Virus record (IMG/VR): IMGVR_UViG_3300044640_001495
Coordinates: 186,001-250,000 of that record
Direction: 5' to 3' (one strand)
DNA length: 64,000 nucleotides
Positions 11,001-23,961 of the stretch are shown piece after piece; the stretch's first letter is position 1, and the number at the start of each line of letters is the position of its first letter. Below the pieces are notes generated by a model. The model was given only the letters and a program-made list of their open reading frames with translations, did no database searches and had not been told where the DNA came from. A program made the position numbers and the translations under genes.

Positions 11001-11448
11001 GATTGGTTGGATCATTCCACACAATTGTCTGTTGAGCCAGATTTTTACCGTTGTTATCTAAAACACTTTCTGTGGTGCTGACAGTGTCAAATTTTAACAA
11101 ACCCTTGGCTGATATGTTACGTTTAGCATTATAACTCAACATTTTAGCAAGACGAAGTACACTTTCTTTTCGTTCCGCTAGTTCAATAAAATTTTCACGG
11201 CTGGCTAGATCTATTCTAAAAGCAAGACTCTGTCCAAGAAATGCAATAGCATCAATCAGAGCAAGATATTCACTGCTTTCAATATAATCGTTAAAATCTT
11301 CTGGATAGTTTTCTCTGAAATAGGCAATAATAACTCTGCGAAGATTTTCAAAATCATAGCTTTTAAAATCAGCACTCTGAAAAGTCTGATAGATCCTAGT
11401 CCAATCTTCGTTGAGTATTAAATTATTTTGTCTAGACGTTGTGGTCAT
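8005..11448 (-). CDS. gp6: Baseplate wedge subunit, T4 gp6-like (extended, 1147 aa)
   Basis: N-terminal DFENLRRVII..YPEDFNDYIESSE..LIDAIAFLG..LA..ENFIELAERKESVLRLAKMLSY; internal FADGVYGNLP and ESVASIRTNAP..YYTQNRMITGEDY motifs; follows gp25. Confidence 0.85.
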   Translation of the reverse strand: MTTTSRQNNLILNEDWTRIYQTFQSADFKSYDFENLRRVIIAYFRENYPEDFNDYIESSEYLALIDAIAFLGQSLAFRIDLASRENFIELAERKESVLRLAKMLSYNAKRNISAKGLLKFDTVSTTESVLDNNGKNLAQQTIVWNDPTNQNWVEQFVTVLNAAMTDNTAFGRSQGSATIDGIATEQYRFRTSSNDVPIFAYSKVVSGRQMAFELVSTSFKGKEEIYEETPFPGNQLGFIYRNDGKGGTSANTGFYLMFKQGSLELADFSIDVPATNELIAVDTNNINNDDVWLFALNSAGVQLNEWTKVSSLIGNNISYNSINSNIRNIYSVLTKENDRIDLAFADGVYGNLPQGSFRVYYRTSNGLSYQISPNEMRGITISIPYTSKTGVRHTLTLTMGLKSTVSSSSPSESVASIRTNAPAQYYTQNRMITGEDYNLAPLSTSQNILKVKAINRISSGISRNYDLIDASGKYSSINVFAADGLIYKQNIEKSLAFKFTNRIDIINFIRNSIEPIFASADTYNFYLTKFDKILFSDTNYRWKQITTDVNNSTGYFYNFIDGTILKVGSYTTSTLQYITPGTLVKFTAPAGQSFRRGKLVTTDANDPEQKDRLWTKVIKITGDGTNAGVGILASGLGAVQFSDIIPSEAIATRIVAKFVNNLPNGIENEMINLMLANLNFGLRFSVIDASWKLVATANLDLLNDFSLGKSGDTTSQNLDSSWIIAFVKQADEYFVRIRGLEYVFGSIEENRFYYDSSQKTYNGKTGDVVKDQIKILGINPDSNLLNPLKQDISFAISDAITFDDGYQSTEEIKIEFYDSDSDGVIDNPEAFEQVAGLDFDLKFLFFQESVDVAGNKIKQYVDNTDNIIVVVQKESLVNVNDYTDGQLIYFYDSNENVVKRVDRTTNTLVLESSYTANYGRAGLKFQYIHNANVDRRIDPSSSNIVDVYLLTRSYNTAFRNFLAGATKKPEEPNSDSLRIAFGSNLDLIKSISDEIIYHPVVYKVLFGSTADVQFQAKFKIVKNVNKLINDNDLKVKIINAINEFFDINNWDFGDRFYVSELITYVINTAAPDISNMVILPRQITQSFGSLFEIQSRVDEIFVSGATVDDIEIVTAISASELRIPVDSVINNSTTFTTSVSTSTSSGS

Positions 11449-11465
11449 TTTACTATCCTATCATG

Positions 11466-11471
11466 TATTTA
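11466..11471 (-). promoter_or_regulatory. Late promoter core TAAATA for gp6
   Basis: TATTTA on the + strand in the gp25-gp6 gap; the same motif precedes many structural genes. Confidence 0.6.
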
Positions 11472-11489
11472 ACTATAAAAATAAACTGC

Positions 11490-11927
11490 TTAGTAAATGA
11501 TTTTGTTTTCTCTATCAAAATCAAAAGTCATTCGTTCATTGATATTAAAAGGCAGATAGGTTATATCAGCTTCTATTCTTATTCCCATATCGGTGGAATC
11601 AATGCTTACTCCGTTGATTTCTATCCTAGGATCATAATTGATAATCTGTTCAACATCGTCTGTAATTAATTTTTTAACTTCTTCAGTAAATTGTTCAAAT
11701 AACAAATCCCATAACGCTGTGCCAAAATCAGGATTTTCTAATTTTTCACCTTTGCGAATATAAAAATGATTGATGATATCCTGTTTTACCAAATCGATGT
11801 CGTATAATTTAAATCCATTTTTGGATTCTTGAGAACTGAAACCTTTGTAGGTAAATGCGGTGTTGCCGCTGGTACCGGTACTGGCAGTTAACGCAGCCAC
11901 TGATTTTTTGTTATATATTTTTGCCAT
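11490..11927 (-). CDS. gp25: Baseplate wedge subunit, gp25-like
   Basis: LVKQDIINHFYIRKGEKLENPDFGTALWDLLFE...INYDPRI motif of the gp25/GPW family. Confidence 0.9.
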   Translation of the reverse strand: MAKIYNKKSVAALTASTGTSGNTAFTYKGFSSQESKNGFKLYDIDLVKQDIINHFYIRKGEKLENPDFGTALWDLLFEQFTEEVKKLITDDVEQIINYDPRIEINGVSIDSTDMGIRIEADITYLPFNINERMTFDFDRENKIIY

Positions 11928-11928
11928 T

Positions 11929-13428
11929 TTATGTATCCCTATCAGTGTTTTTTGGTGTTAGCAGTGTTGGGGCTTGATTCTCATGTAACGCCCAAGGTTC
12001 GTGCATGGGAATTCTTTTCATGATACTGTCTAATGTTCCTGCGGAGTATCGTTTTTTATTGCCCCAGGTTGAACTAGAACTAGTTTTAATATTAGCATGA
12101 GTTTTTAATGTAGAGGCCGGTGTGGCAGCTACTGCCAATCCAGAATTTAAATTAATGTTGCCTCCGTCAATATTAGTGTCTGATGATTTAATATTGGTTG
12201 CTCCGCCTGATGACAGTTTAGTTCCTGATCCGGAAACTAGATCGAATCCTGCACCGACAGTGATTTTCCCATTTTGAGCTGCAATTAAATTCAAATTGCC
12301 CACTGCTTCTATTTGGATGTTGCCTCCTGCGGCTTTTGTGTTGACATTTCTACCAGCTTCAAAATTTATATCTCTATCGGCTCTAATATTAACATCGTTT
12401 TCTGAATGTATGGATATGCTATCTTGTGCATATACATCAATTTTTCCATTGCTGGTCAGTTCAACCCATGCGGTGCCACGTGAATTGCCTATATAGATTA
12501 AGTCTTCACTGTTGTGTAACAATATCTGATGGCCAGTTCGTGTACGCAGTCTTACATATTCATTGTAAGGAATATTTGTATCACCTTTTTCTTTCTTAAG
12601 TGTATCTGCATAGTCTAAAGGTCCTTGGCCGGCTGGTTTTTTTCTTATGAATTGATCATCCCCGTCGTCAAAAACCAATTGGGTGCCACCTAATCTACTA
12701 ACAGGAACCGTTGATGGACTTTGTGCCTGCCGTTTACCAATAAACTGTTTTTTTGCATTGGGGCCTCTATCAAATGGCCCGGGGGTTGATATTCCAAATA
12801 CTGTGTTAGGAATGTTCCTTCTTGAAGTACTTGTGGTAGTTCCACGTACATCGTCTTCTAACAATCCCTGTTCTAAAAATACATCAGCAATAGGATGCAC
12901 CGGTTTTTTTATTTTATCAGTTTCTAAAGATTTATCTAGCGCATTGGTTTTTCTATTGATTTCTGCCACAGGAAGAGGCCGCGTGGTATCGTATTTTTTC
13001 TTTTGTTCTGGTGTCAGTTCAACCGCGGCGGAGCCTCCAATTGCGGGAATCATGTGATTCATAAATCTGCTGGGCACACAAGCAAACCAAAATCCTTCTG
13101 CAGTATTACCATCAACAAAAGCACACAGTACAGTGGTGCCAATTTCAGGAGTTGGAAACCACATGCCATAACTTTTTTGTGTGTCATTGTAATCAGTTTT
13201 ATTCAAGCCTAAATTTTCATACGCAGTGACTCCATAAAAAGGACTGGCATATCTTACTGTATATGTCTGACCTAGGTCGCCAATAGTATTTCCATTATCT
13301 CTTGATATTGACACTTCTAGTCCGCTCATAAATCCGGGATCCAAATATCCTACAACCTTGGCCATCATTATACCGGAGCCGATTTTTCCAGAGCTTTCAC
13401 TAACTGGGGTTCGTTTTTCAATAGACAT
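11929..13428 (-). CDS. gp5: Baseplate central spike, gp5/VgrG-like (OB fold plus beta-helix, no lysozyme domain)
   Basis: SYGMWFPTPEIGTTVLCAFVDGN OB-fold motif; RLRTRTGHQILLHNSEDLIYI..GTAWVELTSNGKIDVYA then beta-helix repeats; position upstream of gp25. Confidence 0.75.
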   Translation of the reverse strand: MSIEKRTPVSESSGKIGSGIMMAKVVGYLDPGFMSGLEVSISRDNGNTIGDLGQTYTVRYASPFYGVTAYENLGLNKTDYNDTQKSYGMWFPTPEIGTTVLCAFVDGNTAEGFWFACVPSRFMNHMIPAIGGSAAVELTPEQKKKYDTTRPLPVAEINRKTNALDKSLETDKIKKPVHPIADVFLEQGLLEDDVRGTTTSTSRRNIPNTVFGISTPGPFDRGPNAKKQFIGKRQAQSPSTVPVSRLGGTQLVFDDGDDQFIRKKPAGQGPLDYADTLKKEKGDTNIPYNEYVRLRTRTGHQILLHNSEDLIYIGNSRGTAWVELTSNGKIDVYAQDSISIHSENDVNIRADRDINFEAGRNVNTKAAGGNIQIEAVGNLNLIAAQNGKITVGAGFDLVSGSGTKLSSGGATNIKSSDTNIDGGNINLNSGLAVAATPASTLKTHANIKTSSSSTWGNKKRYSAGTLDSIMKRIPMHEPWALHENQAPTLLTPKNTDRDT

Positions 13429-15839
13429 TAGAAATTTAATCCTTGATCTTCATCATATTTTATACTATCATCTTCAGTATCAACTACAGTAGTTTTGGGA
13501 GGTTCTGGTTTGGTGGTATCATACAACATCTGTGACTGCTTGCTGATTGCTTCAGATCCATCAATGAAATCTTGTGGTTGTCCTAGCAGTCTACCCATAT
13601 TTAAAGTCTGTTGAAATGTGCCTCCGGAAAATTTACTAGTCACCCAATTGATTTTGTAAATTCCGCTGAAGGGACTGACCCATTCTCCTTTAGGGAAATT
13701 GTAGAGACCACCTTTACCATTAGTTCCAAGATTGGGTTCTACGGGACTTCTCCAAGATAGATACACATATATTTCACTGCTTTCCCAACTCATGGTAGCA
13801 TCTGCAGTGACCTGTCTGTTTGGACCAGGCTCGGCAAAATAATTGCTGTTAATCCCGCTGTCAGATATGAAAAAAGGATCTCCTAGAATATCAATATCAA
13901 CAAGGGTAAGATCCTTGCTGCCATTCAAAAAAGCATTATTAAATGCATCTGCCACCATTTGTTCTGCAGTTTTATCGCCAGATGCCGAACTGGTTTTTAT
14001 GCTATAATCCGGTTTCACTGACGCACCGCCTGTGACTGCTGATACTCCGCTTACTGCCTCGCCTGTTTGCACCACGGCTTGATTTTTTTGTTCATCTGCT
14101 CCTGTCTGTATGTCTTTGTTGGCTATGGCAGCATTTTTGTTCGGCGGTTTAGGCATTTGACCTTGATACCATAATGCATTAAGTGTGATGTCGAATTTTA
14201 ACAAATCGTTATTTGTACCGGTGTAGATGTAATCGTAACGTTTGGCAATAATTTTGCTTAACTGGCCCTGGCCGGCCGGAGCAGCTGAAGGATTTTTTAT
14301 TATGCCTGCATTCACTTTATAAGGCACAACTCTATAGATGTATTTCTTTGCACGAACATTTCTTTTGGTATCATATCCCAGTAGTTGTATCTGACAATCT
14401 AGTCTATACCACTCAACTTGACCGTTTTCATCAATTGCTTCTGGTTTGATAGCATCTTCAGCAAATTTAGAACTTAGAATAATTCGATTAATTACTTCAC
14501 TAACTTTTGTCGTTTTTTGAGGGAAGGTGAACAATCTTAAATTAGTATCGATTGACATTTTCTCTTTAATTACTTTCTTTCCATCTTCATCAAGTACATC
14601 ACTTTCATATTTGTAAACATAGTTTCCGCCAGATGTAGCATCAAACCCCATGGTGTTGGTATCACTGCCGATTCGCCCTGATCCAAAATCTAATTGAACT
14701 TCATCTTTAGTATCACTGATCTTTGTTTCTGCGGGTTTGTTGGGATCGGCAGTGGCTTTTAACACTTCGGTGGCATTTGTAGATTTAATTACACCTATAT
14801 CATCTGAAGAATCTTTTGGAAATACAATTTGATATATATCTGCTAGATCCTGCTGGTCAGATTTGACCAAATCTTGTTGTATTCTATTTAGAGCATTGGT
14901 TAGGCTTCTTGAACCAGATGCCAATACACTCTTAACTGTTTCTCCTGTTATAGAAATGTCGCTGGGTAATATATTGACTAGATCACTGAAACCGCTGAAG
15001 TGCAGGGGCATAGCGACCACTGAATATTTGCTGCCACCTTCGTCAACTTTAAAGTTAATTTCATTTATTCTAATGGTAAAAAATCTAGTTAATTTAGCTG
15101 TTGATGCCAGCATGGCTCCGTTGTCCTTCATCCCTTTAAATTCTAACACTAGAAGGTAAGGAGTTTCTACTAGATAACTAGGATATCCCGCATTTACTGC
15201 TGCAACTTTCATGCTTTGTAAAAACATCCCCATTGAATACGGTTCGTACACATCGAATGTAATGTTACAATTATTGGTATTTCCTTCTTTAGCCCCTGGT
15301 GCCAAATTGTGTTTCATAGAGAAGTTGTCAATGAAATATTCTGGAGCACCATTCACTGTATTGGTTCTTCGTGCATCATAACGGCCTGCTGATGATAGAA
15401 TTACATTTGATAATCTTGTGGGATTATTTCTGTATAAATCCGGATTGTTAAATTCGTTGGGAGTAAGGCAAGACAGCGTCCAGAGAGGAGAATATGAAGC
15501 AAACTGTTCCAGTATATTTTGATAAGGCGGTCCTCCTGCTATAGGTTTCAAAAATGATACAGCAAGCGGTGGAAGTTTTGTAGGATCAGGTTCCCATGAT
15601 TTTATTTTATCTATGGCAATAGTGGCACCTTGAGAAAATGCATTGGTAACTTGTCTGGCTGTTCCGGTTACTGTGCTTATGGCATTAGTTACCTGTGAAA
15701 TAGGATTACCATCTGGCTTGACAAAAGATTCTATTTTATTACCAATGTCTCTAAAACTAGGTGGGCTTGTTTGAGTATAGGCCGACCCTAGTCTAGCATA
15801 TTTTTCTGTTGGAGTTTCACCTGAACCAAAAATTGACAT
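13428..15839 (-). CDS. Baseplate hub protein (gp27/VgrG N-terminal-like), 803 aa
   Basis: Lies between the gp53-like gene and the spike gene; C-terminal IDILGDPFFI and FSGIYKINWVTSKFSGGTFQQTL motifs are typical of hub proteins. Confidence 0.55.
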   Translation of the reverse strand: MSIFGSGETPTEKYARLGSAYTQTSPPSFRDIGNKIESFVKPDGNPISQVTNAISTVTGTARQVTNAFSQGATIAIDKIKSWEPDPTKLPPLAVSFLKPIAGGPPYQNILEQFASYSPLWTLSCLTPNEFNNPDLYRNNPTRLSNVILSSAGRYDARRTNTVNGAPEYFIDNFSMKHNLAPGAKEGNTNNCNITFDVYEPYSMGMFLQSMKVAAVNAGYPSYLVETPYLLVLEFKGMKDNGAMLASTAKLTRFFTIRINEINFKVDEGGSKYSVVAMPLHFSGFSDLVNILPSDISITGETVKSVLASGSRSLTNALNRIQQDLVKSDQQDLADIYQIVFPKDSSDDIGVIKSTNATEVLKATADPNKPAETKISDTKDEVQLDFGSGRIGSDTNTMGFDATSGGNYVYKYESDVLDEDGKKVIKEKMSIDTNLRLFTFPQKTTKVSEVINRIILSSKFAEDAIKPEAIDENGQVEWYRLDCQIQLLGYDTKRNVRAKKYIYRVVPYKVNAGIIKNPSAAPAGQGQLSKIIAKRYDYIYTGTNNDLLKFDITLNALWYQGQMPKPPNKNAAIANKDIQTGADEQKNQAVVQTGEAVSGVSAVTGGASVKPDYSIKTSSASGDKTAEQMVADAFNNAFLNGSKDLTLVDIDILGDPFFISDSGINSNYFAEPGPNRQVTADATMSWESSEIYVYLSWRSPVEPNLGTNGKGGLYNFPKGEWVSPFSGIYKINWVTSKFSGGTFQQTLNMGRLLGQPQDFIDGSEAISKQSQMLYDTTKPEPPKTTVVDTEDDSIKYDEDQGLNF

Positions 15840-15840
15840 T

Positions 15841-16140
15841 TTAAATTCCGATATATTTTTCTATATTTGATTTTTTTGGGCAGAATATAACGGTTCCCGG
15901 AACAAAATCAAAAATTGGATCTTTTATAGTTTCCATATTTCTTTGCGTAAACACCCACCATAGTTTGGCATTACCATAAAGATCAAATGCCAATAAGTCA
16001 GGACGATGTCGGTATTGTGTTTCTATAATATAACGATAATCATCTGCCTCTGAAGGCACAGGTCGAATAGTTAATAATTCTAAATAAAAATTATTTTCTT
16101 TTGTTGTATAATAGGGTGATGCTCGATTATATGAAGCCAT
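15841..16140 (-). CDS. gp53: Baseplate wedge protein, gp53-like (LysM-type)
   Basis: YRHRPDLLAFDLYGNAKLWWVF motif. Confidence 0.8.
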   Translation of the reverse strand: MASYNRASPYYTTKENNFYLELLTIRPVPSEADDYRYIIETQYRHRPDLLAFDLYGNAKLWWVFTQRNMETIKDPIFDFVPGTVIFCPKKSNIEKYIGI

Positions 16141-17510
16141 TAGATGTATCCTTGGCCGCCAACAATTTGACCGTTGGCGTAACTTTTGAGATTGAATTGT
16201 CTTAATCTTGTTCTATTATAAATTGGCGCTACTGTTACCGATATAGTGCTCATTATAGGCACCCACGTTGGTGCTCCACCTTTAGGAGTATACTTGATAT
16301 AACTTGTATCATCTTTGAAATCAACTGAAAAACTTTTTACAATTACAGGAACATTATTAAAAACTCTTGCACCGTATCCAGTGAGGTTACAGATAATAGG
16401 CGGATTGCCTACGTTTTCGCCCGAACCAAAAAACATCTTGGTGGCTGTTTTTAAAAACGTAGTTCCCTCAATCCAATATTGTGCATCAAGTTCATTTTCT
16501 ACTGAGAACTCTCCAGAAATTTGTATATCATCAACCTGACTGTTCTTATAGGCATAGAATGGTTGTATATTATGGATTGGCTCTATCTGAGTATAGTTGG
16601 CCTTGGAAGATACTGTGATGTTTGGAAGATAAGGAAAAACAAAACCATTGGTGTCCACAAGTCTATTGAATGCTGTGCCAAACAATCCAAAATTGCAATT
16701 TATTCTCACACGCCAATCATTTACTGCGCCCGGCTTTAACTCGACAAACGATCCTTGTTGGGTAAATAATTCAGCACCGCTAGGAAGATTCTTACCTCTG
16801 GCCATACTTAAAAGATTGTTTACCATTCCTGCTGCACCTGATACTTTACCGGCAAGTGCAGCAATACCACCACCTAACCCGCCACTGGCCAATCCTAATT
16901 TGTCTAAACTTGCCCCTATCGCAGCACCAACATTACTGATACCACCAGCAATACCACCTACTTGGCCAGCAACACCGCCAAGTGCTCCGGCGACTCCCGA
17001 AATTGCACTAGTAGCATTTGAGGCTAGTCCTTGTAGAGCACCTCCAATGCCTGTGGCATTTGACGCAAGGCTCTGTACTGTGCTGTTGATACCGCCTAGA
17101 GCACCGGTGACTCCAGCCAGTGCTCCTTTGGCATCATTAGCAAGATTTCCTGCTGCGGCTGTGAACCCGTTTAGACCTGTACCTATTTCTCCGCTCAAAC
17201 GGCCAACGGTGGCATCTAAATTTGATTTTAATGAAGCAAAATTTTCGGGAGCTTTTTTAATCGCTGCTGCGGCATCATTGGCCGCAGCTTCAACTTGTGT
17301 TGACACATTTGCAACCAATCTTGCTAAAGGATTACTGTTAGGTCCCGAAGAAGCTGTTAATGCACCCCCACCAAATGCTGCCGTTAATTTTTCATTAATG
17401 CCTCTGTTGTTAGCAACCTGTTCAGCCGTGATACCTTCAGGATCGCCGCTGGCTCGGTTGATTCGTGCAGCTTCTTGTGCTGGAGTTTCAGGATAAGAGT
17501 TACGTGCCAT
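16140..17510 (-). CDS. Baseplate/tail-tube initiator (gp48/gp54-like) with a long Gly/Ala-rich N-terminal extension
   Basis: C-terminal FVFPYLPNITVS..ANY...GNPPIICNLTGYG..FNNVPVIVKSFSVDF tube-fold motif. ATG at 17510 with an AAGGA SD is preferred over TTG at 17519. Confidence 0.65.
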   Translation of the reverse strand: MARNSYPETPAQEAARINRASGDPEGITAEQVANNRGINEKLTAAFGGGALTASSGPNSNPLARLVANVSTQVEAAANDAAAAIKKAPENFASLKSNLDATVGRLSGEIGTGLNGFTAAAGNLANDAKGALAGVTGALGGINSTVQSLASNATGIGGALQGLASNATSAISGVAGALGGVAGQVGGIAGGISNVGAAIGASLDKLGLASGGLGGGIAALAGKVSGAAGMVNNLLSMARGKNLPSGAELFTQQGSFVELKPGAVNDWRVRINCNFGLFGTAFNRLVDTNGFVFPYLPNITVSSKANYTQIEPIHNIQPFYAYKNSQVDDIQISGEFSVENELDAQYWIEGTTFLKTATKMFFGSGENVGNPPIICNLTGYGARVFNNVPVIVKSFSVDFKDDTSYIKYTPKGGAPTWVPIMSTISVTVAPIYNRTRLRQFNLKSYANGQIVGGQGYI

Positions 17511-17538
17511 TTTGAGCAAATTTCCTTGTCATATAGAC

Positions 17539-17544
17539 TATTTA
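17539..17544 (-). promoter_or_regulatory. Late promoter core TAAATA for the baseplate operon
   Basis: TATTTA on + in the divergent intergenic gap, about 30 nt upstream of ATG 17510. Confidence 0.6.
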
Positions 17545-17547
17545 TTA

Positions 17548-17575
17548 TTGACAAAATGTGCTATTATATTAATAA
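17548..17575 (+). promoter_or_regulatory. Possible sigma70-type promoter for gp55
   Basis: Perfect TTGACA at 17548-17553 and AT-rich -10 candidates (TGcTATTAT 17559-17567; TAATAA 17570-17575); spacing is imperfect. Confidence 0.4.
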
Positions 17576-17593
17576 CCGGAGAATTCTAAAACA

Positions 17594-18460
17594 ATGACAA
17601 TAATTACGCAGCCTCCTAAGATCAAGTATCTTACCAACAAGGATCTACTAAAAGAAATACATCTCAGCAAGAATACCTATTGCACCTACAGCGATCCTGC
17701 ATACAGTGACTATGATTTAATCATCCCAAATTTGTCTAAAATCAATATTAGAACAATTGCCGATGCCAAGAGAAATCGTGCCATCAAGATGGGTAAAAAA
17801 GCCCACGAACTTGCACAGTCAGGTGGTAAAAAGTTTCCTGCCAAAGATTACGAAGTTGACTACAAAAAAATCCTTAAAACTGATGTGGTGTTTAGAGTCA
17901 TGACCTTTGAACATGTGCCGCTTGCACCAGGAAGAAAAAAGACCTTGAAGAATACCGCAGATAGTCATGAGAAGGTGAATTTTCCTCCTTTCCAACACTG
18001 GAAGTTTGATGAAAATGACAATCTTATATTGGTGGGTAAAAGTCATTGGAAAGGTGATTTTGTTACTGGCTCCTTTAACAAAGAGCATGGACAAATGACT
18101 AACAATCTAGCCCGCATGTTCTTAAAATTATGTGAGCGGTATGCAACTAGAGGCAACGTGCGTGGCTACACTTATAATGACGAAATGCGTGGACAGGCTA
18201 TTCTACAGCTAACTCAGATTGGTCTACAGTTTGACGAATCAAAATCTGACAATCCGTTTGCCTACTACACGGCTGCTGTTACAAATTCATTCGTTAGAAT
18301 TATCAACATTGAAAAACGTAATCAAAATATTCGTGATGATATTTTAGAAATCAATGGCATGAATCCATCATGGACAAGACAGAATGCTTCGGGTAAGCCA
18401 GGTGGCGGATACGGACCAGTTAGTACTGCACCAGTAGACGGGGGTGGAGATTGGGATTGA
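17594..18460 (+). CDS. gp55: Late-transcription sigma factor, T4 gp55-like, with a large internal insertion
   Basis: YLTNKDLLKEI near the N-terminus; LARMFLKLCERYATRGNVRGYTYNDEMRGQA..QFDESKSDNPFAYYTAAVTNSFVRIINIEK matches the gp55 core. Confidence 0.85.
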   Translation: MTIITQPPKIKYLTNKDLLKEIHLSKNTYCTYSDPAYSDYDLIIPNLSKINIRTIADAKRNRAIKMGKKAHELAQSGGKKFPAKDYEVDYKKILKTDVVFRVMTFEHVPLAPGRKKTLKNTADSHEKVNFPPFQHWKFDENDNLILVGKSHWKGDFVTGSFNKEHGQMTNNLARMFLKLCERYATRGNVRGYTYNDEMRGQAILQLTQIGLQFDESKSDNPFAYYTAAVTNSFVRIINIEKRNQNIRDDILEINGMNPSWTRQNASGKPGGGYGPVSTAPVDGGGDWD

Positions 18461-18501: not shown

Positions 18502-19512
18502 ATGTCATTATTCAAAAAAGTAGCCTGCTTCACTGATATTCATTTCGGATTAAAATCAGGAAGTCGTACGCATAACCAAGACTGCGAAGATTTCGTCTCG
18601 TGGTTTTGTGATGTTGCCAAACAGGAAAACTGCGAAACTGCAATTTTCCTCGGCGATTGGCATCACAATAGAAACACCACTGATGTTTCGACTATGAACT
18701 ATACAGTTTCTAATCTAGAGAAGCTGAGCCAATCATTTGAAAAAGTCTATTTCATTCTAGGCAATCACGACTTGTTCTATAAAGACAAGCGTGAAATTAA
18801 TTCTATTGAATTCATGCGTCTGTTTCCTAATATTATTCCTGTTAGAGAACGACTTACTCAAGGCGATGTAACTATTATGCCTTGGCTAGTAGGCGACGAG
18901 TGGAAAACTATTCCGGACATCAAAAGCCGGTATCTGTTTGGTCACTTGGAACTGCCCAGCTTCTACATGAACGCCATGGTACAGATGCCGGATCACGGAA
19001 CTATTCAATCGGGTCACTTTGCCAATCAAGAATATGTGTTCACTGGGCACTTTCATAAGCGACAAAACAATAGAAATATACATTATATCGGTAATGCATT
19101 TCCTCACAACTATGCCGATGCTGGAGATGACGACCGCGGCATGATGATGTTAGAGTGGGGTGGCAAGCCTGAGTTTCGTACTTGGACTGCTCAACCTGTT
19201 TATCGCACTTTCAAACTGAGTCAAATTATTGATAAACCGGACGAGCTCCTAAGAGAAAAGATGCATTGCCGTGTTACCATTGACCTCCCTATCAGTTTTG
19301 AAGAAGCAAACTTTATCAAAGAAACATTCATGCCGCAATACAAATTGCGTGAGCTTATGTTGATTCCAGAAAAAGTTGAAGTAGATGCACAATCTACTCC
19401 TATTGATATCAACTTCGAATCAGTTGATACCATTGTGATGAATCAAATTAATGCCATTGACAGTGATACCTTTGACAAGGCCATGCTGTTGGAGATCTAC
19501 AATAACCTATGA
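18502..19512 (+). CDS. gp47: Recombination endonuclease subunit, Mre11/SbcD-like
   Basis: Metallophosphoesterase motifs DIHFG, GDWHH, GNHD, GHLE, GHFH. Confidence 0.95.
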   Translation: MSLFKKVACFTDIHFGLKSGSRTHNQDCEDFVSWFCDVAKQENCETAIFLGDWHHNRNTTDVSTMNYTVSNLEKLSQSFEKVYFILGNHDLFYKDKREINSIEFMRLFPNIIPVRERLTQGDVTIMPWLVGDEWKTIPDIKSRYLFGHLELPSFYMNAMVQMPDHGTIQSGHFANQEYVFTGHFHKRQNNRNIHYIGNAFPHNYADAGDDDRGMMMLEWGGKPEFRTWTAQPVYRTFKLSQIIDKPDELLREKMHCRVTIDLPISFEEANFIKETFMPQYKLRELMLIPEKVEVDAQSTPIDINFESVDTIVMNQINAIDSDTFDKAMLLEIYNNL

Positions 19513-21287
19513 TTAAAATCAAAGACCTAACAGTTAGAAACTTTATGAGCGTGGGCGCACAGACCCAAGCAATTAACTTTGACAAAGGACAACTGACGCT
19601 AGTGCTAGGTGAAAACTTAGATCTAGGCGGTGATGACAGCGGAGCCCGTAATGGTACAGGTAAAACCACTATTATCAATGGCCTTAGCTATGCCATATTT
19701 GGTACTGCGTTAACTAACATCAAGAAAGATAATCTTGTTAACAAGATCAACAACAAAGGTATGCTGTGTACTGTTAGTTTTGAAAAGGACGGCATTGACT
19801 ATCGTATCGAGCGTGGCCGGAAACCTAACATTTTAAAATTTACTGTTAACGGTCAAGAACAAGAAAGCCTAGATCAAGATGAGAGTCAAGGCGATTCAAG
19901 AGAAACACAAAAAGATATTGAAGATGTATTCGGTATGTCCCATGACATGTTCAAACATCTTGTGGCTCTTAACACTTACACTGAACCGTTTCTTTCTATG
20001 AAGGCTGCGGATCAACGTGCTATCATTGAACAACTGTTGGGTATTACACAATTAAGTGAAAAGGCAGAAGCTCTTAAAGAACAGATCAAACAGAGCAAAG
20101 ATAATATTTCCACAGAAAATATAAAACTTGAAACTATCAAAGCCAGCAATGAACGTATTCAACAGAGTATCGAATCTCTTGAACGCAAACAACGCCTGTG
20201 GGAAGAACAACACGAAACTGCTCTTACTAATTTAACCAAAGCCATTGAAAAATTGTTGGATGTTGAGATTGATGATGAAATTGCCAATCAACGTGCTTTG
20301 GTAGAGTGGAACAAAAGTAAAAAAGAACGTGATAGCCTAACAGTTCTTGTTGCCAAACAGACTAGTACACTAGAAAGAGAACAGCGAACACTGGAAAAAC
20401 TAGAAAGAGAATTAATAACTCTTGCAGATCACAAGTGTCATAGTTGTGGTCAAGATCTACATGATACCAAACATGATGAAATGATGTCTGCTAAAAGCAA
20501 GCAGGTTGAAGAAAGCCAAGGACATTTAAAAACTCACAGTGAAGAACTCAGTGAACTTAACGAAGCACTTAGTCTAGTTGGTGAATTAGGTCAATGTCCC
20601 ACAGTGATCTATGACAATCTAGAACAAGCACTCAATCATAAAAATACTCTAGGCAGTTTAGAGCGTGATTTAGAAATCAAAGTTGCGGAAGATAATCCTT
20701 ACATTGAACAAATTGAAGAATTACGCAATACTGCGGTACAGGAAGTAGACTATGAAGGCTTAAACAAACTAGTGCGTGTTAAAGACCATCAAGAGTTCTT
20801 ACACAAACTGTTAACTAACAAAGACAGCTTTATCCGTAAGCGTATTATTGATCAAAATCTAGCCTATCTAAATCAGCGACTGACGTATTATCTCGATAAA
20901 ATTGGTTTACCGCATCTGGTAGAATTCCAAAACGATCTAACTGTTATTATTACACAATTAGGACAAGATCTAGACTTTGATAATCTATCACGTGGTGAAC
21001 GCAATAGGCTTATTTTGTCTATGTCGTGGGCATTCCGTGATGTATGGGAAAACTTATATCAAGCAATTAATCTGTTATTCATTGACGAACTTGTTGATAG
21101 CGGGATGGATGCCAGCGGAGTTGAAAGTAGTATTGCGGTACTCAAGAAGATGACCCGTGAACGTAATAAGAATGTATTCTTGATCAGTCATAGAGATGAT
21201 CTAACCAGCCGTGTTAATCATGTGCTCAAGGTTATTAAAGAAAACGGATTTACCAGCTATTCAAATGATGTGGAGATTGTTGCTTGA
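19509..21287 (+). CDS. gp46: Recombination ATPase subunit, Rad50/SbcC-like
   Basis: Walker A NGTGKTT, coiled coils with zinc hook CHSCG, signature LSRGE, Walker B LLFIDE, H-loop ISH. Confidence 0.95.
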   Translation: MIKIKDLTVRNFMSVGAQTQAINFDKGQLTLVLGENLDLGGDDSGARNGTGKTTIINGLSYAIFGTALTNIKKDNLVNKINNKGMLCTVSFEKDGIDYRIERGRKPNILKFTVNGQEQESLDQDESQGDSRETQKDIEDVFGMSHDMFKHLVALNTYTEPFLSMKAADQRAIIEQLLGITQLSEKAEALKEQIKQSKDNISTENIKLETIKASNERIQQSIESLERKQRLWEEQHETALTNLTKAIEKLLDVEIDDEIANQRALVEWNKSKKERDSLTVLVAKQTSTLEREQRTLEKLERELITLADHKCHSCGQDLHDTKHDEMMSAKSKQVEESQGHLKTHSEELSELNEALSLVGELGQCPTVIYDNLEQALNHKNTLGSLERDLEIKVAEDNPYIEQIEELRNTAVQEVDYEGLNKLVRVKDHQEFLHKLLTNKDSFIRKRIIDQNLAYLNQRLTYYLDKIGLPHLVEFQNDLTVIITQLGQDLDFDNLSRGERNRLILSMSWAFRDVWENLYQAINLLFIDELVDSGMDASGVESSIAVLKKMTRERNKNVFLISHRDDLTSRVNHVLKVIKENGFTSYSNDVEIVA

Positions 21288-21514
21288 GTTCAGAAAGCCA
21301 TGACAAGATGATTGCTGCTTTTCAGGAATATTTTAAGTGGCAAGAACGATTTGAATACAAAGGCTCTGACGAAGCAGGCATTAAGGCACGATATTGGCTA
21401 TCAGAAATACGTAATGAAGCAAGCGTAAGGCGCATAGAAATACAGGCAAAAAGAGAAGAACGCAAACAAGCCAGAAAAGGCATGATAGGAAGGCCCAAGA
21501 AAATAAGTACCTGA
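21284..21514 (+). CDS. Small basic protein resembling the histone H1-like (Hc1) family
   Basis: KGSDEAGIKARYWLSEIRNEASVRRIEI resembles the Hc1 motif KGNKAAGxRARK; TTG start overlaps the gp46 stop, with a GGAG SD. Confidence 0.55.
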   Translation: MSSESHDKMIAAFQEYFKWQERFEYKGSDEAGIKARYWLSEIRNEASVRRIEIQAKREERKQARKGMIGRPKKIST

Positions 21515-21948
21515 TGACATGGTACTATAAGAAGAAAGAAGTTGTTGAAATCTCCGAAGATTACATCGGTTTCGTATATCTTATTACTAATGTCGTCTCT
21601 GGGCGCAAGTATATAGGCAAAAAACTAGCCAAGTTTGCAAAGACCACTTATAAAACAGTAACTTTGAAGAACGGCAAAAAGAAGAAAAAGAAAATTAGAG
21701 GCAAAATTGAAAGCGATTGGAAGGACTATTATGGTTCTAGCGATGCGCTAACAGCAGACGTACAGGCCTTAGGCAAAGAAAACTTCACCAGAGAAATATT
21801 ATTCTACTGCAAAAACAAATCAGAATGCAGCTACATCGAGGCAAGAGAACAATTCAAACACAAAGTTCTAGAATCAACTGACTGGTACAACGGTCACATA
21901 CAGGTTCGAGTTCACGGCTCACATATCCTCAAAAAACCCAAAATTTAA
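21514..21948 (+). CDS. Minimal GIY-YIG (Seg-like) endonuclease, 144 aa
   Basis: GFVYLITN..SGRKYIGKK, YYGSS, conserved E (YIEAREQ) and WYN; Lys-rich insert; no C-terminal DNA-binding domain. Confidence 0.85.
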   Translation: MTWYYKKKEVVEISEDYIGFVYLITNVVSGRKYIGKKLAKFAKTTYKTVTLKNGKKKKKKIRGKIESDWKDYYGSSDALTADVQALGKENFTREILFYCKNKSECSYIEAREQFKHKVLESTDWYNGHIQVRVHGSHILKKPKI

Positions 21949-21959
21949 CAAACACACAC

Positions 21960-22460
21960 CGCCACTAGGCTCAATAAATCTAGGCAACAAACTGCCAAAT
22001 AAGCCCGCACCGGCGTTGTTAGTGTGCCCTTAAAGCTGGATCTCGGATCGCAGTCAATGGAATTCCCTACTTGGCAGAGGGGTTGTACAGTAGTATCCTT
22101 AACAGGACCACGATCGGATATGCCTACAGAACCGGTTTACTGTACAAGAAAGTATTATATCAAGGCTAAAGATGGGAGAAAAACCCACGGTTGTTGCGCA
22201 AGACTGCGTTTGTGTAGCAATCCGCCGTCATTAATAAGACTTGGCTCGAGGTACCGGATGACCGCCTCTGTAAACGCCATAACGCCGTATGTACTGTGCA
22301 ACTCGCATAATGCTTCTTAGCCCGCAAGGGCTAAGTATGACTGAACAATCTGCATAATACTTAAATTGCTTCGCAATTACAATAATCAACACAGTTTAGG
22401 AGAAAGAAAATTCGTTGAGCGAAAGCGAAAACGAATGTGAGCTTCAGCTCACAATTACAA
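21960..22460 (+). ncRNA. Candidate large structured non-coding RNA (or structured origin)
   Basis: 540-nt gap in an otherwise compact genome. It contains a long-range helix (22011-22017/22281-22287), a 10-bp helix (22083-22092/22138-22147), a G-U-rich helix (22189-22223) and GNRA-capped hairpins (22316-22335, 22410-22436). Confidence 0.6.
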
Positions 22461-22466
22461 TAAATA
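22461..22466 (+). promoter_or_regulatory. Late promoter core TAAATA
   Basis: TAAATA 22 nt upstream of ATG 22489. Confidence 0.55.
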
Positions 22467-22488
22467 ACATATCAACCTTCGAGTAAAC

Positions 22489-23961
22489 ATGAGAGTAAGC
22501 AATATAATATTTGAACAACATATGATTAATTCTAATAAAATCCTATTAGAATCATGTCATGACCTTGATATCGAACAACAGGCAGTTGTTGAAGGTATTT
22601 ACAACGAGTTACGACCTTTAATCGAAGCTAGTCTTAGTGCTGATCAAATTAAAACTATATTTGGTAGTATAGAGAAGTCTGCAACTGATGCTGGCGGTAA
22701 TAGAACCATGCTGGGCAAAGGTGTTGACGTAGCTAAAAAAGCTGATGAAGTGGTCAACAACATTGGTAAATGGCTACAGGATACTACTCCAGTTAAGGCA
22801 TTTGATCAAAAGTTCGATAACTTAAAGAATAAAATCAATACCAAGTTTCCAGATAGTAAAATTTTAGATATGATTTCAAATATGGGAATCTATGCTACAA
22901 ACAATCCTGGAAAGACTGCTGCAATTATTGGTGTTCTAACTGCTATTGCTGCCTTAGCAGGCGGGCCAGTAGGCGGTGCTATTGCTGGTCAAGTACTGCG
23001 TGGTGCTGTAGAATTACTTAAAGGCGAAAAATTATCCACTGCCTTAGGCAAAGGTATTAAAACTGCTGCCTATGGTTTCATTGCAGGAAAGACTTTCGAA
23101 TTGCTAGGCGACGCAATCAAAGGCGGAGCACAGGTAGTTAAAGATAATCTGTTTCCAAACGCACTTCGTTTAAACATGACTCAGGTCTTTGATGAAGTTG
23201 GCGGTGAACTAGGTACTCGCTGGGCTAATTTTGAAATTAAAGGACTAGTTGGTAGACCTGAAGACATTAACACAGCTAAAAAATTGTTTGGCGAAGCTGG
23301 GCAATATTGGAAAGCCGGAGACTATGAGCAGAGTGCAGCCACTTGGAAATCACTGGAAGGCTTGATTGCTGACACATTCAACGATAAAGAATACATAGCG
23401 CAGATTGCGTCTGATCAAGCTAGTAGAACTATGATCAGTCAGGCAGCACAAGCTGCTCAAGAAGCTACTAAATATCTTGGAGCGGCTGCACAGGGTGCAG
23501 TAGCTGCCGCAGGAGTTAAAGGTGCTCCTGCTAAAAAAGAATCTATACAACATCATCAACGTCCCTTAAGTGAAGGACAAGTGTATCTGGTGTTTAAACG
23601 AATCACCGAATCGCAACTCAACGAAGGGCCAGCGGATGCTATCAAGGGTCTGGCTGGCAAGGTCATGAACAAGGCTCGCACAGTTGGCACCAATCTAACA
23701 ACTAAGATTACTGCTGACAAATTAAATTCTGCTTGGCAAAAGGCAGGCGCACCCGTTGACAGTGAAGAACTTAAAAAGTTTTTAACCACTCAAGGTGTTG
23801 ATGCTGCAATAGTAGACGGCGTATATAAATCTTTAAAAATCAAGAGTGGTGTTGCAGCCACATCTTTGTATGCACAAGTTAAAACAGATTTAGCAAAACT
23901 AGACATGAAAGGCAAACAGCGTCTTTCGGCTTATCTACAAAAACAATTAGGAACTGCTTAA
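22489..23961 (+). CDS. Probable internal head/ejection protein with a glycine-zipper hydrophobic segment
   Basis: Late promoter; L-x-E sites (LLES, LIEA, LSEG, LNEG) of the gp21 cleavage type; AAIIGVLTAIAALAGGPVGGAIAG hydrophobic stretch. Confidence 0.5.
   Translation: MRVSNIIFEQHMINSNKILLESCHDLDIEQQAVVEGIYNELRPLIEASLSADQIKTIFGSIEKSATDAGGNRTMLGKGVDVAKKADEVVNNIGKWLQDTTPVKAFDQKFDNLKNKINTKFPDSKILDMISNMGIYATNNPGKTAAIIGVLTAIAALAGGPVGGAIAGQVLRGAVELLKGEKLSTALGKGIKTAAYGFIAGKTFELLGDAIKGGAQVVKDNLFPNALRLNMTQVFDEVGGELGTRWANFEIKGLVGRPEDINTAKKLFGEAGQYWKAGDYEQSAATWKSLEGLIADTFNDKEYIAQIASDQASRTMISQAAQAAQEATKYLGAAAQGAVAAAGVKGAPAKKESIQHHQRPLSEGQVYLVFKRITESQLNEGPADAIKGLAGKVMNKARTVGTNLTTKITADKLNSAWQKAGAPVDSEELKKFLTTQGVDAAIVDGVYKSLKIKSGVAATSLYAQVKTDLAKLDMKGKQRLSAYLQKQLGTA

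What the first reader, a model, noticed from the sequence alone, without database searches (positions are those of the whole stretch)
21514..22460. Catalytic-domain-only GIY-YIG nuclease followed by an approximately 500-nt, multi-domain structured RNA candidate
Seen: the largest non-coding gap in the window (21949-22488) directly follows a 144-aa GIY-YIG gene. The gap folds into nested helices. A long-range stem (GCAC..CGGCGTT 22007-22017 with AACGCCG..GTGC 22281-22299) encloses about 290 nt. Inside it are TTGTACAGTA/TACTGTACAA (22083-22092/22138-22147) with internal hairpins, TGGG/CCCA (22173-22187), a long helix at 22189-22223 that needs several G-U pairs on the + strand (favouring RNA or single-stranded function on +), and GAGG/CCTC (22248-22268). 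After it come CTTAGCCC-GCAA-GGGCTAAG, ATTCGTT..GC-GAAA-GC..AACGAAT and TGTGAGC-TTCA-GCTCACA. Known: homing GIY-YIG enzymes normally carry extra DNA-binding domains, and several compact nucleases instead get specificity from an adjacent RNA. Inference: this is an undescribed nuclease-associated large ncRNA (possible ribonucleoprotein), or alternatively a structured replication origin next to the gp46/47 recombination genes. I could not match it to group I or II introns, RNase P or tmRNA.
Basis: partly seen in the sequence, partly recalled or inferred. Interest (0 to 1): 0.8.

Follow-up and report, generated by a model that had tools for sequence, protein, structure and literature searches.

The report
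Known phage RNA beside nuclease gene
The gap holds a real structured RNA of about 450 nt whose first third is the already catalogued "Polynucleobacter-1" motif, and it sits right behind a small nuclease gene in almost every related freshwater T4-like phage; its function is unknown, but it does not look like a guide RNA.

Summary
Window 22002-22147 (+) matches Rfam RF01718, Polynucleobacter-1 RNA, at 82 bits (threshold 37). The 2010 paper that defined the motif already noted it lies downstream of genes like PSSM2_218. I show that gene is a homologue of the window's GIY-YIG protein.

What is new:
- The conserved element is about 440-455 nt (about 22000-22454), three times the Rfam model.
- Its middle is a core with two pseudoknots, strongly supported by covariation.
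- Its 3' part has two twinned sequence units whose variable bases are always identical, plus hairpins.
- The RNA starts a median 14 nt after the stop codon of a nuclease with no DNA-binding domain. That nuclease is SegE-type GIY-YIG in about 95% of loci and PD-(D/E)xK in about 4%.
- Nuclease plus RNA follows gp47/gp46 in 64 of 65 related phage contigs, so it is a stable module, not a sporadic homing gene.

The ORF at 22024-22320 is not conserved. There is no guide-like variable segment, and RNA and nuclease histories are uncoupled. Best reading: a large phage ncRNA co-expressed with a recombination-type nuclease, function unknown.

The parts
21514..21948 (+). 144-aa SegE-type GIY-YIG nuclease gene, catalytic domain only. 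Its start overlaps the stop of the 76-aa ORF at 21284-21514.
   Evidence: Pfam PF19835, E 3e-33. Conserved Y22, Y33, G35, E109 and N126 align with I-TevI. 39% identical to P-SSM2 PSSM2_218.
21949..21999 (+). Poorly conserved spacer between the stop codon and the RNA. It holds a motif like a T4 late promoter (AATAAAT, 21973-21979) and a small hairpin at 21983-21996. Many homologues lack this spacer.
   Evidence: Conservation profile. The RNA starts a median 14 nt after the nuclease stop. The promoter reading rests on the sequence motif only.
22002..22147 (+). 5' domain = Polynucleobacter-1 RNA (Rfam RF01718). Helices: P1 22007-11/22023-27, hairpin 22036-53, hairpin 22065-68/22079-82, and outer stem 22083-92/22138-47 enclosing 22097-98/22105-06 and 22112-17/22132-37. 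A likely small 5' pseudoknot pairs 22003-05 with 22012-14.
   Evidence: cmscan 82 bits against a threshold of 37, full model 1-141. The same family hits homologous loci. Covariation.
22173..22187 (+). Short hairpin TGGG/CCCA.
   Evidence: Compensatory variants (GGG/CCC, GCAG/CUGC, GCUAC/GUAGC). The column count is only 69% because the alignment register shifts.
22189..22223 (+). Long hairpin rich in G-U pairs. Its loop (22203-08) forms pseudoknot PK1 with 22283-88.
   Evidence: 12 of 13 pairs have compensatory changes and 88% of cells pair. PK1 pairs in 96.9% of cells, with 6 of 6 pairs compensated. Mutual-information hits.
22224..22288 (+). Invariant pseudoknotted core. PK2 pairs 22227-30 with 22259-62. 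Helix 22242-45/22276-79 encloses helix 22247-51/22265-70. Invariant blocks: AAGAC (22236-40), GGTACCGG (22250-57), ACCGCC (22261-66).
   Evidence: PK2 99.6% paired; 22242-45/22276-79 98.5% with 4 of 4 pairs compensated; inner helix 98.2%. For the whole core, 91.2% of cells pair against 73.3% in shuffles (0 of 500 reach it) and 29-48% when partners are slid.
22299..22312 (+). Twin unit A: xxA-CUC-NN-AU-R-A-W-G.
   Evidence: Positions 22305, 22306, 22309 and 22311 carry the same base as 22352, 22353, 22356 and 22358 in 99% of 136 sequences, while the fixed CUC versus UCU difference persists.
22316..22335 (+). Hairpin CTTAGCCC-GCAA-GGGCTAAG between the twin units.
   Evidence: Conserved hairpin whose third stem position varies (TTAGCCC, TTTGCCC, TTCGCCC with matching partners).
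22346..22359 (+). Twin unit B: xxA-UCU-NN-AU-R-A-W-A.
   Evidence: No complementary or third copy in the cassette, within about 3 kb of flank, or in the 64-kb window.
22366..22376 (+). Small hairpin TTGC-TTC-GCAA. A linker of variable length and sequence follows (22377-22403).
   Evidence: The stem covaries (GUGC/GCAC, CUGC/GCAG, CAUC/GAUG, ACAC/GUGU). Linker variability.
22410..22436 (+). Hairpin ATTCGTT/AACGAAT with a conserved GA/GAA internal loop, capped by a 2-bp GC helix and a GNNA loop.
   Evidence: The inner GC pairs are 96-98% paired with GC-to-AU exchanges. The outer stem visibly covaries in A4. Column counts are lowered by register shifts.
22436..22453 (+). Terminal hairpin. It marks the 3' edge of what different genomic contexts share.
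   Evidence: 7 pairs, 93-98% paired; six of the seven show three or four pair types. Similarity between contexts ends here.
22460..22466 (+). ATAAATA, like a T4 late promoter, ahead of the 490-aa gene at 22489-23961. It flanks the RNA and is probably not part of it.
   Evidence: The motif recurs where the downstream gene is on the + strand. Inference from the known T4 late-promoter consensus TATAAATA.

Best explanation
**What it is (shown).** One structured RNA gene of about 440-455 nt lies on the + strand at about 22000-22454.
- Its first 146 nt are a member of Rfam RF01718 (Polynucleobacter-1 RNA).
- The rest is outside the Rfam model but equally conserved. It forms a core with two pseudoknots and a 3' domain with two twinned sequence units and four hairpins.
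- The RNA begins a few nucleotides after the stop codon of a small nuclease that has no DNA-binding domain. The nuclease is usually a SegE-type GIY-YIG and occasionally a PD-(D/E)xK enzyme.
- Nuclease plus RNA is a near-universal module at a fixed position, behind the gp47/gp46 (Mre11/Rad50-like) recombination genes, in a clade of uncultured freshwater T4-like phages.

**How it most likely works (inferred).**
- The RNA is made by read-through from the nuclease gene, as a long 3' extension of an early or middle transcript that ends at the terminal hairpins.
- It then acts as a stable, folded non-coding RNA, of the same general kind as other large ornate phage RNAs such as GOLLD and ROOL.
- Its two twinned units offer two copies of the same 9-11-nt sequence to a two-fold partner: a dimeric protein or a repeated nucleic-acid site.
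- It is not a programmable guide. The link to the nuclease reflects shared expression and probably a shared role in DNA recombination or processing, not RNA-directed targeting.
For: - Identity: RF01718 at 82 bits against a threshold of 37, with hits in 10 of the 14 homologous loci scanned and in none of the three cultured-phage loci.
- Extent: conservation runs from 22000 to 22455 in 49 to 136 non-redundant homologues. Median length is 442 nt.
- Structure: 34 of 53 alifold pairs are compensated. In the core, with its two pseudoknots, 91.2% of cells pair against 73.3% in shuffles (0 of 500 reach it), and 421 cells changed on both sides against 121 expected.
- Non-coding.
- Linkage: of 110 loci found through the RNA alone, 102 have GIY-YIG immediately upstream and 3 have it with one inserted ORF. 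Two of the other five were shown to carry PD-(D/E)xK, two more (L213, L231) have an ORF of the same size that was not scanned, and 1 has no nuclease.
- Stability: of 65 loci found through gp46, 62 have GIY-YIG plus RNA, 2 have PD-(D/E)xK plus RNA, and 1 has neither.
- Co-transcription: the RNA starts a median 14 nt after the stop codon, often 0-2 nt.
- Against a guide or specific RNP.
- Twin units.
- The PD-(D/E)xK alternative also matches a PHROG annotated as a Holliday-junction resolvase, which fits a recombination role next to gp46/47.
Against: - No transcript data exist, so co-transcription, processing and stability are all inferred.
- The partner of the twin units is unknown. Searches for a complementary or third copy found nothing, and their local fold is not resolved.
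- Near-obligate adjacency to a nuclease across more than 20 different gene neighbourhoods is stronger than shared expression alone would require, and fits a direct functional tie.
- The RNA is 93-100% identical between two phages whose flanking genes are only 70-80% identical. That could reflect nuclease-driven gene conversion rather than function.
- My RNA-anchored sample used an exact core pattern, so it is biased towards close relatives.
Confidence: 0.45

Rival explanations
1. Selfish homing cassette. The nuclease is a free-standing homing endonuclease. The RNA gene is either its conserved DNA target and landing site or a payload that travels with it. DNA breaks and repair spread and reshuffle the cassette.
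For: - Two unrelated nuclease families occupy the same slot, as seen where several homing endonucleases colonise one conserved target.
- The cassette occurs in 26 upstream and 20 downstream gene contexts.
- Nuclease, 5' domain, core and 3' domain have discordant similarities.
- The RNA is 93-100% identical between phages whose flanks are 70-80% identical.
- Truncated nuclease genes sit beside an intact RNA (L329, L331), and one RNA has no nuclease (L246).
- PHROG hits to homing endonuclease families.
Against: - The distribution is not sporadic: 64 of 65 gp46-related phages carry the module at the same site, and nearly all nuclease genes are intact.
- No empty site was found among close relatives.
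- The protein lacks the DNA-binding domain that known GIY-YIG homing enzymes use.
- Only one copy was seen in this 64-kb window; copy number in the other contigs was not checked.
- T4-like phages recombine heavily anyway, so mosaic structure is expected without homing.
Confidence: 0.2
2. One reading: the RNA is a cofactor of the nuclease, forming a ribonucleoprotein. It supplies the substrate recognition, assembly or regulation that the domain-only enzyme lacks.
For: - Near-obligate adjacency, with the RNA starting at the stop codon.
- The nuclease has no DNA-binding domain.
- The RNA-linked clade has a longer lysine-rich insertion than the two RNA-less homologues in the alignment.
- Two identical RNA units could seat a dimeric enzyme.
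- Analogy with HEARO/omega RNAs of IscB and TnpB (my own knowledge).
Against: - No guide-like variable segment of fixed length. The only variable stretch, 22377-22403, varies in length from 0 to about 35 nt.
- RNA and protein similarities are uncorrelated.
- RNAs 89-97% identical are paired with GIY-YIG or with PD-(D/E)xK.
- A sulfotransferase-like gene can sit between nuclease and RNA.
- The same 97%-identical protein goes with NN = GC or NN = AG twin units.
- Homologous domain-only proteins occur in 467 cultured-phage records; the three loci I checked have no such RNA.
Confidence: 0.12
3. A cis-acting 3' untranslated element. The structure stabilises, terminates or regulates the nuclease or early-operon mRNA and has no role of its own in trans.
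For: - The RNA abuts the stop codon.
- It lies at the boundary between + strand early genes and either late-promoter genes or convergent genes.
- Terminal hairpins sit at the 3' edge.
Against: - About 440 nt with two pseudoknots and invariant single-stranded blocks is far more than termination or stability needs.
- No T-run follows the terminal hairpin on the + strand.
- The RNA persists beside truncated nuclease genes, with no nuclease, and separated from the nuclease by another ORF.
Confidence: 0.13
4. A structured replication origin or other DNA-level element next to the recombination genes.
For: Position beside gp46/gp47. Direct repeats are present.
Against: - Helices rely on G-U pairs that would be C-A mismatches on the other strand.
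- The cumulative GC-skew minimum is at 16-18 kb, where gene orientation switches at about 17.55 kb. Nothing happens at 22 kb.
- 44% of cassettes are not next to gp46.
- There is no AT-rich unwinding region; the gap is 44% GC against 42% for the window.
Confidence: 0.03
5. A self-splicing intron or other ribozyme that carries a homing-endonuclease ORF.
For: A structured, pseudoknotted RNA associated with interchangeable endonuclease families is the classic signature of a group I intron (my own knowledge).
Against: - No Rfam intron or ribozyme family matches, even at E<=10.
- In at least 35 loci the RNA is followed by a convergent gene, so there is no downstream exon.
- The flanking genes look complete, and the nuclease ORF starts by overlapping the previous gene's stop, as in an ordinary operon.
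Confidence: 0.03

Closest known systems
Polynucleobacter-1 RNA motif (Rfam RF01718; Weinberg et al. 2010, PMC2864571)
   Same: - The 5' 146 nt match the full model well above threshold.
- Same habitat: freshwater metagenomes.
- Same upstream gene family: GOS11034 / PSSM2_218-like, shown here to be GIY-YIG.
- The original alignment even carries a provisional 3' 'tail' with a questioned pseudoknot.
   Different: - The Rfam model stops at 22147. The conserved RNA runs about 300 nt further.
- Two pseudoknots are now supported by covariation, and there is a twinned 3' domain.
- The 2010 text found no copy in any sequenced purified phage. Here hundreds of copies lie in T4-like viral contigs.
- The upstream gene is identified as a nuclease, with a PD-(D/E)xK alternative.
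GOLLD and ROOL: large ornate non-coding RNAs of phages and prophages
   Same: Several hundred nucleotides, multi-domain and pseudoknotted, carried by phages, with no known function. This is the 'works like' comparison behind the best explanation (my own knowledge).
   Different: No sequence or model match. Those RNAs tend to lie near tRNA genes, not behind a nuclease gene. Oligomerisation was not tested here.
HEARO / omega RNAs of IscB and TnpB (OMEGA systems)
   Same: A large structured RNA encoded next to, and probably co-transcribed with, a compact nuclease gene on a mobile or exchangeable segment.
   Different: - The nuclease folds differ: GIY-YIG or PD-(D/E)xK, not RuvC/HNH.
- There is no guide segment and no transposon ends.
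- RNA and protein do not co-vary.
- The same RNA goes with two unrelated folds.
Free-standing Seg-type GIY-YIG homing endonucleases of T4 (SegA-G), and group I introns that carry endonuclease genes
   Same: The catalytic domain belongs to the SegE family. It sits between conserved genes of a T4-like phage. The region is mosaic. As in introns, one RNA is found with different endonuclease families.
   Different: No DNA-binding domain. Near-universal rather than sporadic distribution. The RNA interrupts no gene and matches no intron model.

Membership tests
Rfam RF01718 Polynucleobacter-1 RNA | Covariance-model score at or above the curated gathering score, over the whole model | tested here: met
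   82 bits against 37, model positions 1-141 of 141, E 7e-18
Rfam RF01718 Polynucleobacter-1 RNA | Model helices kept by compensatory changes in relatives | tested here: met
   P1, the two hairpins and the outer stem all show several standard pair types. Ten of the 14 homologous loci scanned also score 63-115 bits.
Rfam RF01718 Polynucleobacter-1 RNA | Lies downstream of a GOS11034 / PSSM2_218-like gene (2010 description) | tested here: met
   The window's GIY-YIG protein is 39% identical to PSSM2_218, E 6e-24
GIY-YIG nuclease superfamily, SegE-type domain | Profile match plus the GIY and YIG tyrosines and the catalytic Glu and Asn | tested here: met
   PF19835, E 3e-33. Y22, Y33, G35 and E109 are invariant and N126 is nearly so; they align with I-TevI. 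No sequence relative in the PDB. The fold was not modelled.
Homing endonuclease (free-standing, Seg-like) | Separate DNA-binding domain that gives a long target site | tested here: not met
   144 aa, of which 127 are the catalytic domain; no other Pfam domain
Homing endonuclease (free-standing, Seg-like) | Sporadic presence or absence among close relatives, with empty target sites | tested here: not met
   64 of 65 gp46-related loci carry the module. No empty site among close relatives.
Homing endonuclease (free-standing, Seg-like) | Site-specific cleavage of genomes that lack the gene, and biased inheritance | not testable with these tools
   Needs enzyme assays and mixed infections
RNA-guided nuclease systems (omega RNA / CRISPR-like) | A variable guide segment of fixed length attached to a conserved scaffold | tested here: not met
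   The only variable stretches are the spacer 21949-21999 and the linker 22377-22403, and both vary in length. The twin units have few alleles. No matching targets were found.
RNA-guided nuclease systems (omega RNA / CRISPR-like) | Co-evolution of the RNA scaffold with its protein | tested here: not met
   Spearman 0.06-0.17. Near-identical RNAs go with two unrelated nuclease folds.
Group I / II introns and small ribozymes | Match to a family model; interruption of a host gene with exons on both sides | tested here: not met
   No hit at E<=10. Convergent downstream genes in at least 35 loci.
Type III toxin-antitoxin (RNA antitoxin plus nuclease toxin) | Tandem array of about 36-nt RNA repeats upstream of an endoribonuclease toxin gene | tested here: not met
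   The RNA is downstream. It has only two partial repeats 47 nt apart, embedded in a 440-nt fold.
Replication origin | Strand-symmetric DNA element at a skew turning point | tested here: not met
   The structure depends on G-U pairs, so it is strand-specific. The skew minimum is at 16-18 kb.

The most novel reading that the evidence does not exclude
The RNA is an obligate partner of small nucleases that lack a DNA-binding domain, though not a guide. Its two identical units would seat a nuclease dimer, of either the GIY-YIG or the PD-(D/E)xK fold, and so assemble, restrain or aim a recombination or host-DNA-processing nuclease. That would be a new class of nuclease-associated structured RNA in T4-like phages.
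Probability: 0.12. Interest if true: 0.85.

Novelty: new member of a known kind. Interest (0 to 1): 0.5.

Why it matters
Polynucleobacter-1 has been an orphan RNA motif since 2010.

What this work adds:
- It is only the front third of a pseudoknotted RNA of about 440 nt.
- It is abundant in uncultured freshwater T4-like phages.
- It is fixed behind a small nuclease gene whose fold can be swapped.

This turns a vague entry into a concrete, testable module.

It also adds a candidate to the short list of large ornate phage RNAs of unknown function.

The two sequence units that co-vary by identity rather than by complementarity are unusual. They point to a two-fold partner that could be fished out experimentally.

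For annotation, it shows that the many 'NAD synthetase' labels on these phage genes are GIY-YIG nucleases.

Tried and rejected
- **Similarity to cultured phages.** blastn of the gap against 50,697 phage records gave no match. tblastn of the downstream 490-aa protein also gave none.
- **Genome scan.** The 14-base core pattern returned only chance hits in GC-rich genomes. nhmmer found no RNA in any of them.
- **Partner for the twin units.** No complementary or third copy within about 3 kb of flank, in the nuclease gene or upstream region, or in the 64-kb window.
- **By-eye ideas for the twin units, all rejected.**
  - Box C/D or K-turn: the majority AUAAU alleles lack the second GA.
  - CsrA-type GGA loops: only the GG allele fits.
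  - Sigma-70 or late promoters: the spacing is wrong.
  - Self-complementarity: only some alleles are palindromic.
  - Local hairpins: the NN bases fall in a hairpin loop of the predicted fold in only 42% and 19% of sequences.
- **T4 EndoII (DenA) as a relative of the protein.** No detectable similarity.
- **PDB sequence search.** Nothing found.
- **Extra ORFs between nuclease and RNA as a third component.** They fall into two unrelated families. One looks like a sulfotransferase, so they are probably inserted passenger genes.
- **Literature.** Nothing beyond the 2010 paper.
- **Alignment quality.** MAFFT columns are out of register for several short hairpins, which lowers some pair percentages. 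I did not build covariance models to correct this.
Full report
**The locus.** ORF 21514-21948 encodes a 144-aa protein. Residues 3-129 match Pfam SegE_GIY-YIG (E 3e-33) and nothing else. Upstream lie gp47-like (18502-19512, Metallophos) and gp46-like (19509-21287, AAA_23/SMC_N) genes and a 76-aa ORF whose stop overlaps the nuclease start. Downstream, after 540 nt, comes a 490-aa gene with no known family, then a T4 baseplate gene on the other strand. The window is a T4-like phage. Identical or near-identical copies of the locus lie on IMG/VR viral contigs of up to 353 kb.

**Identity of the RNA.** A scan of the whole window against Rfam gave one hit above threshold: RF01718, Polynucleobacter-1 RNA, at 22002-22147 (+), 82 bits against a gathering score of 37, covering the full model. 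A permissive scan of the gap confirmed it and found nothing else credible; there was no intron, ribozyme, RNase P or tmRNA hit. ARAGORN found no tRNA or tmRNA in the window.

The family comes from Weinberg et al. 2010 (PMC2864571). The supplement says that most examples lie downstream of genes of family GOS11034 with possible homology to PSSM2_218 of cyanophage P-SSM2. It also says that none was found in a sequenced purified phage, and that the 3' half is not always detected. I fetched PSSM2_218, which is annotated 'NAD synthetase'. It is 39% identical to the window protein, E 6e-24. The original Stockholm file also carries a 'tail' subfamily with extra hairpins and a questioned pseudoknot 3' of the Rfam model.

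**Extent and conservation.** The GIY-YIG protein has at least 445 relatives in IMG/VR, and I fetched 80 loci. In about 65 of them, blastn finds the gap sequence right after the gene, mostly over 22000-22470. A conservation profile over 49 sequences below 90% identity shows conservation from about 21999 to 22378 and from 22399 to 22465. It also shows two variable stretches, 21949-21998 and 22379-22398.

Pooling gave 174 copies, 136 of them below 93% identity. The median length between the equivalents of 22003 and 22453 is 442 nt.

The ORF at 22024-22320 is not conserved:
- Only 7 of 136 sequences keep an open run of 90 or more codons.
- 1935 of 2188 indel events are not multiples of three.
- Substitutions show no third-position excess (5034, 5271 and 4120 at codon positions 1, 2 and 3).

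**Structure.** RNAalifold on 40 sequences predicted 53 pairs, 34 of them with compensatory changes. A mutual-information scan over 136 sequences recovered the Rfam helices and the long hairpin 22189-22223. It also recovered helix 22242-44/22277-79, helix 22248-49/22267-69 and the terminal hairpin. Two crossing interactions appeared as well: the hairpin loop 22203-08 with 22283-88, and 22229-31 with 22258-60.

I then counted a hand-specified structure with both pseudoknots on a 65-sequence alignment of the core (A2):
- 91.2% of cells pair, against 73.3% in shuffles (0 of 500 shuffles reach it).
- When partners are slid by one to three columns, only 29-48% pair.
- 421 cells changed on both sides, against 121 expected.
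- Pseudoknot 1 pairs in 96.9% of cells with 6 of 6 pairs compensated. Pseudoknot 2 pairs in 99.6%. Helix 22242-45/22276-79 pairs in 98.5% with 4 of 4 compensated.

Many pairs are G-U, so the fold belongs to the + strand transcript. Invariant single-stranded or junction blocks are AAGAC (22236-40), GGTACCGG (22250-57) and ACCGCC (22261-66).

Across the 136 homologues it pairs in only 47% and 69% of cells, without compensation. Both of its strands have better-supported partners. The energy z-scores are modest: -2.5 on the + strand and -2.0 on the - strand.

**The 3' domain and an unexplained feature.** After the core come a unit A (22299-22312), a hairpin (22316-35), a unit B (22346-59) and a small hairpin (22366-76). 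These are followed by a linker of variable length, a hairpin with a GA/GAA internal loop and a GNNA cap (22410-36), and a terminal hairpin (22436-53).

Units A and B are diverged direct repeats: xxA-CUC-NN-AU-R-A-W-G and xxA-UCU-NN-AU-R-A-W-A. Each follows a helix strand ending in GCUAA. Their variable positions carry the same base in 99% of 136 sequences (22305/22352, 22306/22353, 22309/22356, 22311/22358). The fixed CUC versus UCU difference persists throughout, which rules out simple gene conversion.

I found no complementary or third copy in the RNA, in the nuclease gene, in the flanks or in the window. The same 97%-identical protein goes with NN = GC or with NN = AG. The local fold of the units is unresolved. 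The simplest reading is that one partner reads both units, but that is inference.

**Linkage to nucleases.** Of the 120 RNA-anchored loci, 110 have enough upstream sequence to judge.
- 102 have a GIY-YIG ORF (54-94% identical) ending 142-313 nt before the core motif.
- 3 have GIY-YIG about 1 kb upstream, with one ORF inserted between.
- 5 have no GIY-YIG.

In two of those five (L224, L256), the ORF abutting the RNA is a 173-188-aa PDDEXK_15 protein (PF24608, E about 1e-29). It also matches a PHROG annotated as a RusA-like Holliday-junction resolvase. Two more (L213, L231) have ORFs of similar size that I did not scan. One (L246) has no nuclease at all. Rfam confirms the 5' domain in the PD-(D/E)xK-linked loci and in the nuclease-less locus. 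The RNA starts a median 14 nt after the nuclease stop codon; the 10th to 90th percentile range is 1-50 nt.

**Is it a sporadic selfish gene or a stable module?** The neighbourhoods vary. There are 26 clusters of upstream genes: gp46 in 95 of 170 loci, then radical SAM, 2OG-Fe oxygenase and others. There are 20 clusters of downstream genes, some convergent.

Sampling by gp46 instead gives a different picture. Of 65 testable loci (59-98% identity), 62 have GIY-YIG plus RNA after gp46, 2 have PD-(D/E)xK plus RNA, and 1 has neither. All close relatives of the window phage carry the module, and no empty site was found. This is not the patchy pattern of a typical homing endonuclease gene.

The region is nevertheless highly mosaic:
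- Pairwise nuclease identity and RNA identity are almost uncorrelated (Spearman 0.06-0.17). The three RNA domains correlate only weakly with each other (0.18-0.41).
- One relative (L333) has flanks and nuclease at 63-95% nucleotide identity per 60-nt window, mostly 70-85%. Its RNA is 93-100% identical.
- Another relative (L331) has lost the nuclease 3' end and half of the 5' RNA domain, but keeps the rest of the RNA at 93-100% identity.
- PD-(D/E)xK-linked RNAs are not each other's closest relatives. One is 89% identical overall, and 97% in the 3' domain, to a GIY-YIG-linked RNA.

**The protein outside this clade.** tblastn finds domain-only homologues in 467 cultured-phage records, mostly cyanophages, often labelled 'NAD synthetase'. 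In Methylophilales phage Melnitz and phage C48C1 the gene is followed by small ORFs. In those two and in a Variovorax phage, neither nhmmer nor Rfam finds the RNA. The protein family therefore does not need this RNA in general. T4 EndoII (DenA), another domain-only GIY-YIG enzyme, shows no detectable sequence similarity.

**Interpretation.** The evidence fixes what the element is:
- a member of RF01718;
- in full form, a doubly pseudoknotted RNA of about 440 nt;
- co-located and probably co-transcribed with a small nuclease;
- part of a stable module in a freshwater T4-like phage clade.

The evidence argues against a guide RNA, a coding region, an intron and an origin. The cumulative GC-skew minimum lies at 16-18 kb, where gene orientation switches at about 17.55 kb.

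It does not fix the function. I favour a trans-acting ornate ncRNA that is expressed with, and perhaps works in the same DNA-processing pathway as, the nuclease. Its twin units would engage a two-fold partner.

The main rivals are a homing-type cassette in which the RNA gene is target or cargo, a non-guide RNP, and a cis-acting 3' element. Transcript mapping, nuclease assays with and without the RNA, and a pull-down would separate them.

Noticed in passing
L246:3911-4304 and L246:5169-5240: The one viral contig whose RNA has no nuclease gene in front of it also encodes a permuted (two-piece, alpha-type) tmRNA (RF04321 at 92 bits; RF01849 at 65 bits) and a tRNA.
   Followed up: no
window 21514-21948; GenBank records listed; phrog_447: Homologues of this GIY-YIG nuclease are widely annotated 'NAD synthetase' in cultured-phage records and in PHROGs. 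Examples are P-SSM2 PSSM2_218, Sinorhizobium phages and the Synechococcus ACG-2014f series. The Pfam match and the motif residues say GIY-YIG nuclease.
   Followed up: partly
window 21284-21514: A 76-aa ORF sits between gp46 and the nuclease. Its start overlaps the gp46 stop and its stop overlaps the nuclease start. It is conserved at 89-96% identity in relatives and appears as an 80-aa called gene in other contigs. It matches no family.
   Followed up: partly
L221:10375-11145, L069:3433-4278, L039:3276-4265, L050:2452-3426: In some lineages one extra ORF is inserted between the nuclease and the RNA. There are two unrelated families. One looks like a phage sulfotransferase by language-model and structure similarity. 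In the L039, L050 and L069 type, the Rfam 5' domain is not detected.
   Followed up: partly
window 22460-22466 (also 21973-21979): ATAAATA motifs resembling the T4 late promoter lie just after the RNA, ahead of the 490-aa gene. In this lineage one also lies between the nuclease stop and the RNA.
   Followed up: no
window about 17520-17594: Gene orientation switches here: - strand genes run from 8005 to 17519, and + strand genes start at 17594. The cumulative GC-skew minimum falls in the same place. It is a divergent transcription point, and a better origin candidate than the gap.
   Followed up: no
window 42569-56519: Two very large adjacent + strand ORFs of 1845 and 2786 aa. I did not examine them.
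   Followed up: no
window 22310-22357: A 15-codon mini-ORF runs from the ATG at the end of twin unit A to a TAA inside twin unit B, across the hairpin. The spacer length varies among homologues, so it is probably fortuitous. I did not test this.
   Followed up: no
L329 and L331 (relatives of the window locus): Nuclease genes truncated at residue 102 or 121 sit beside an otherwise near-identical RNA. In L331 the deletion also removes the equivalent of 21859-22085.
   Followed up: partly
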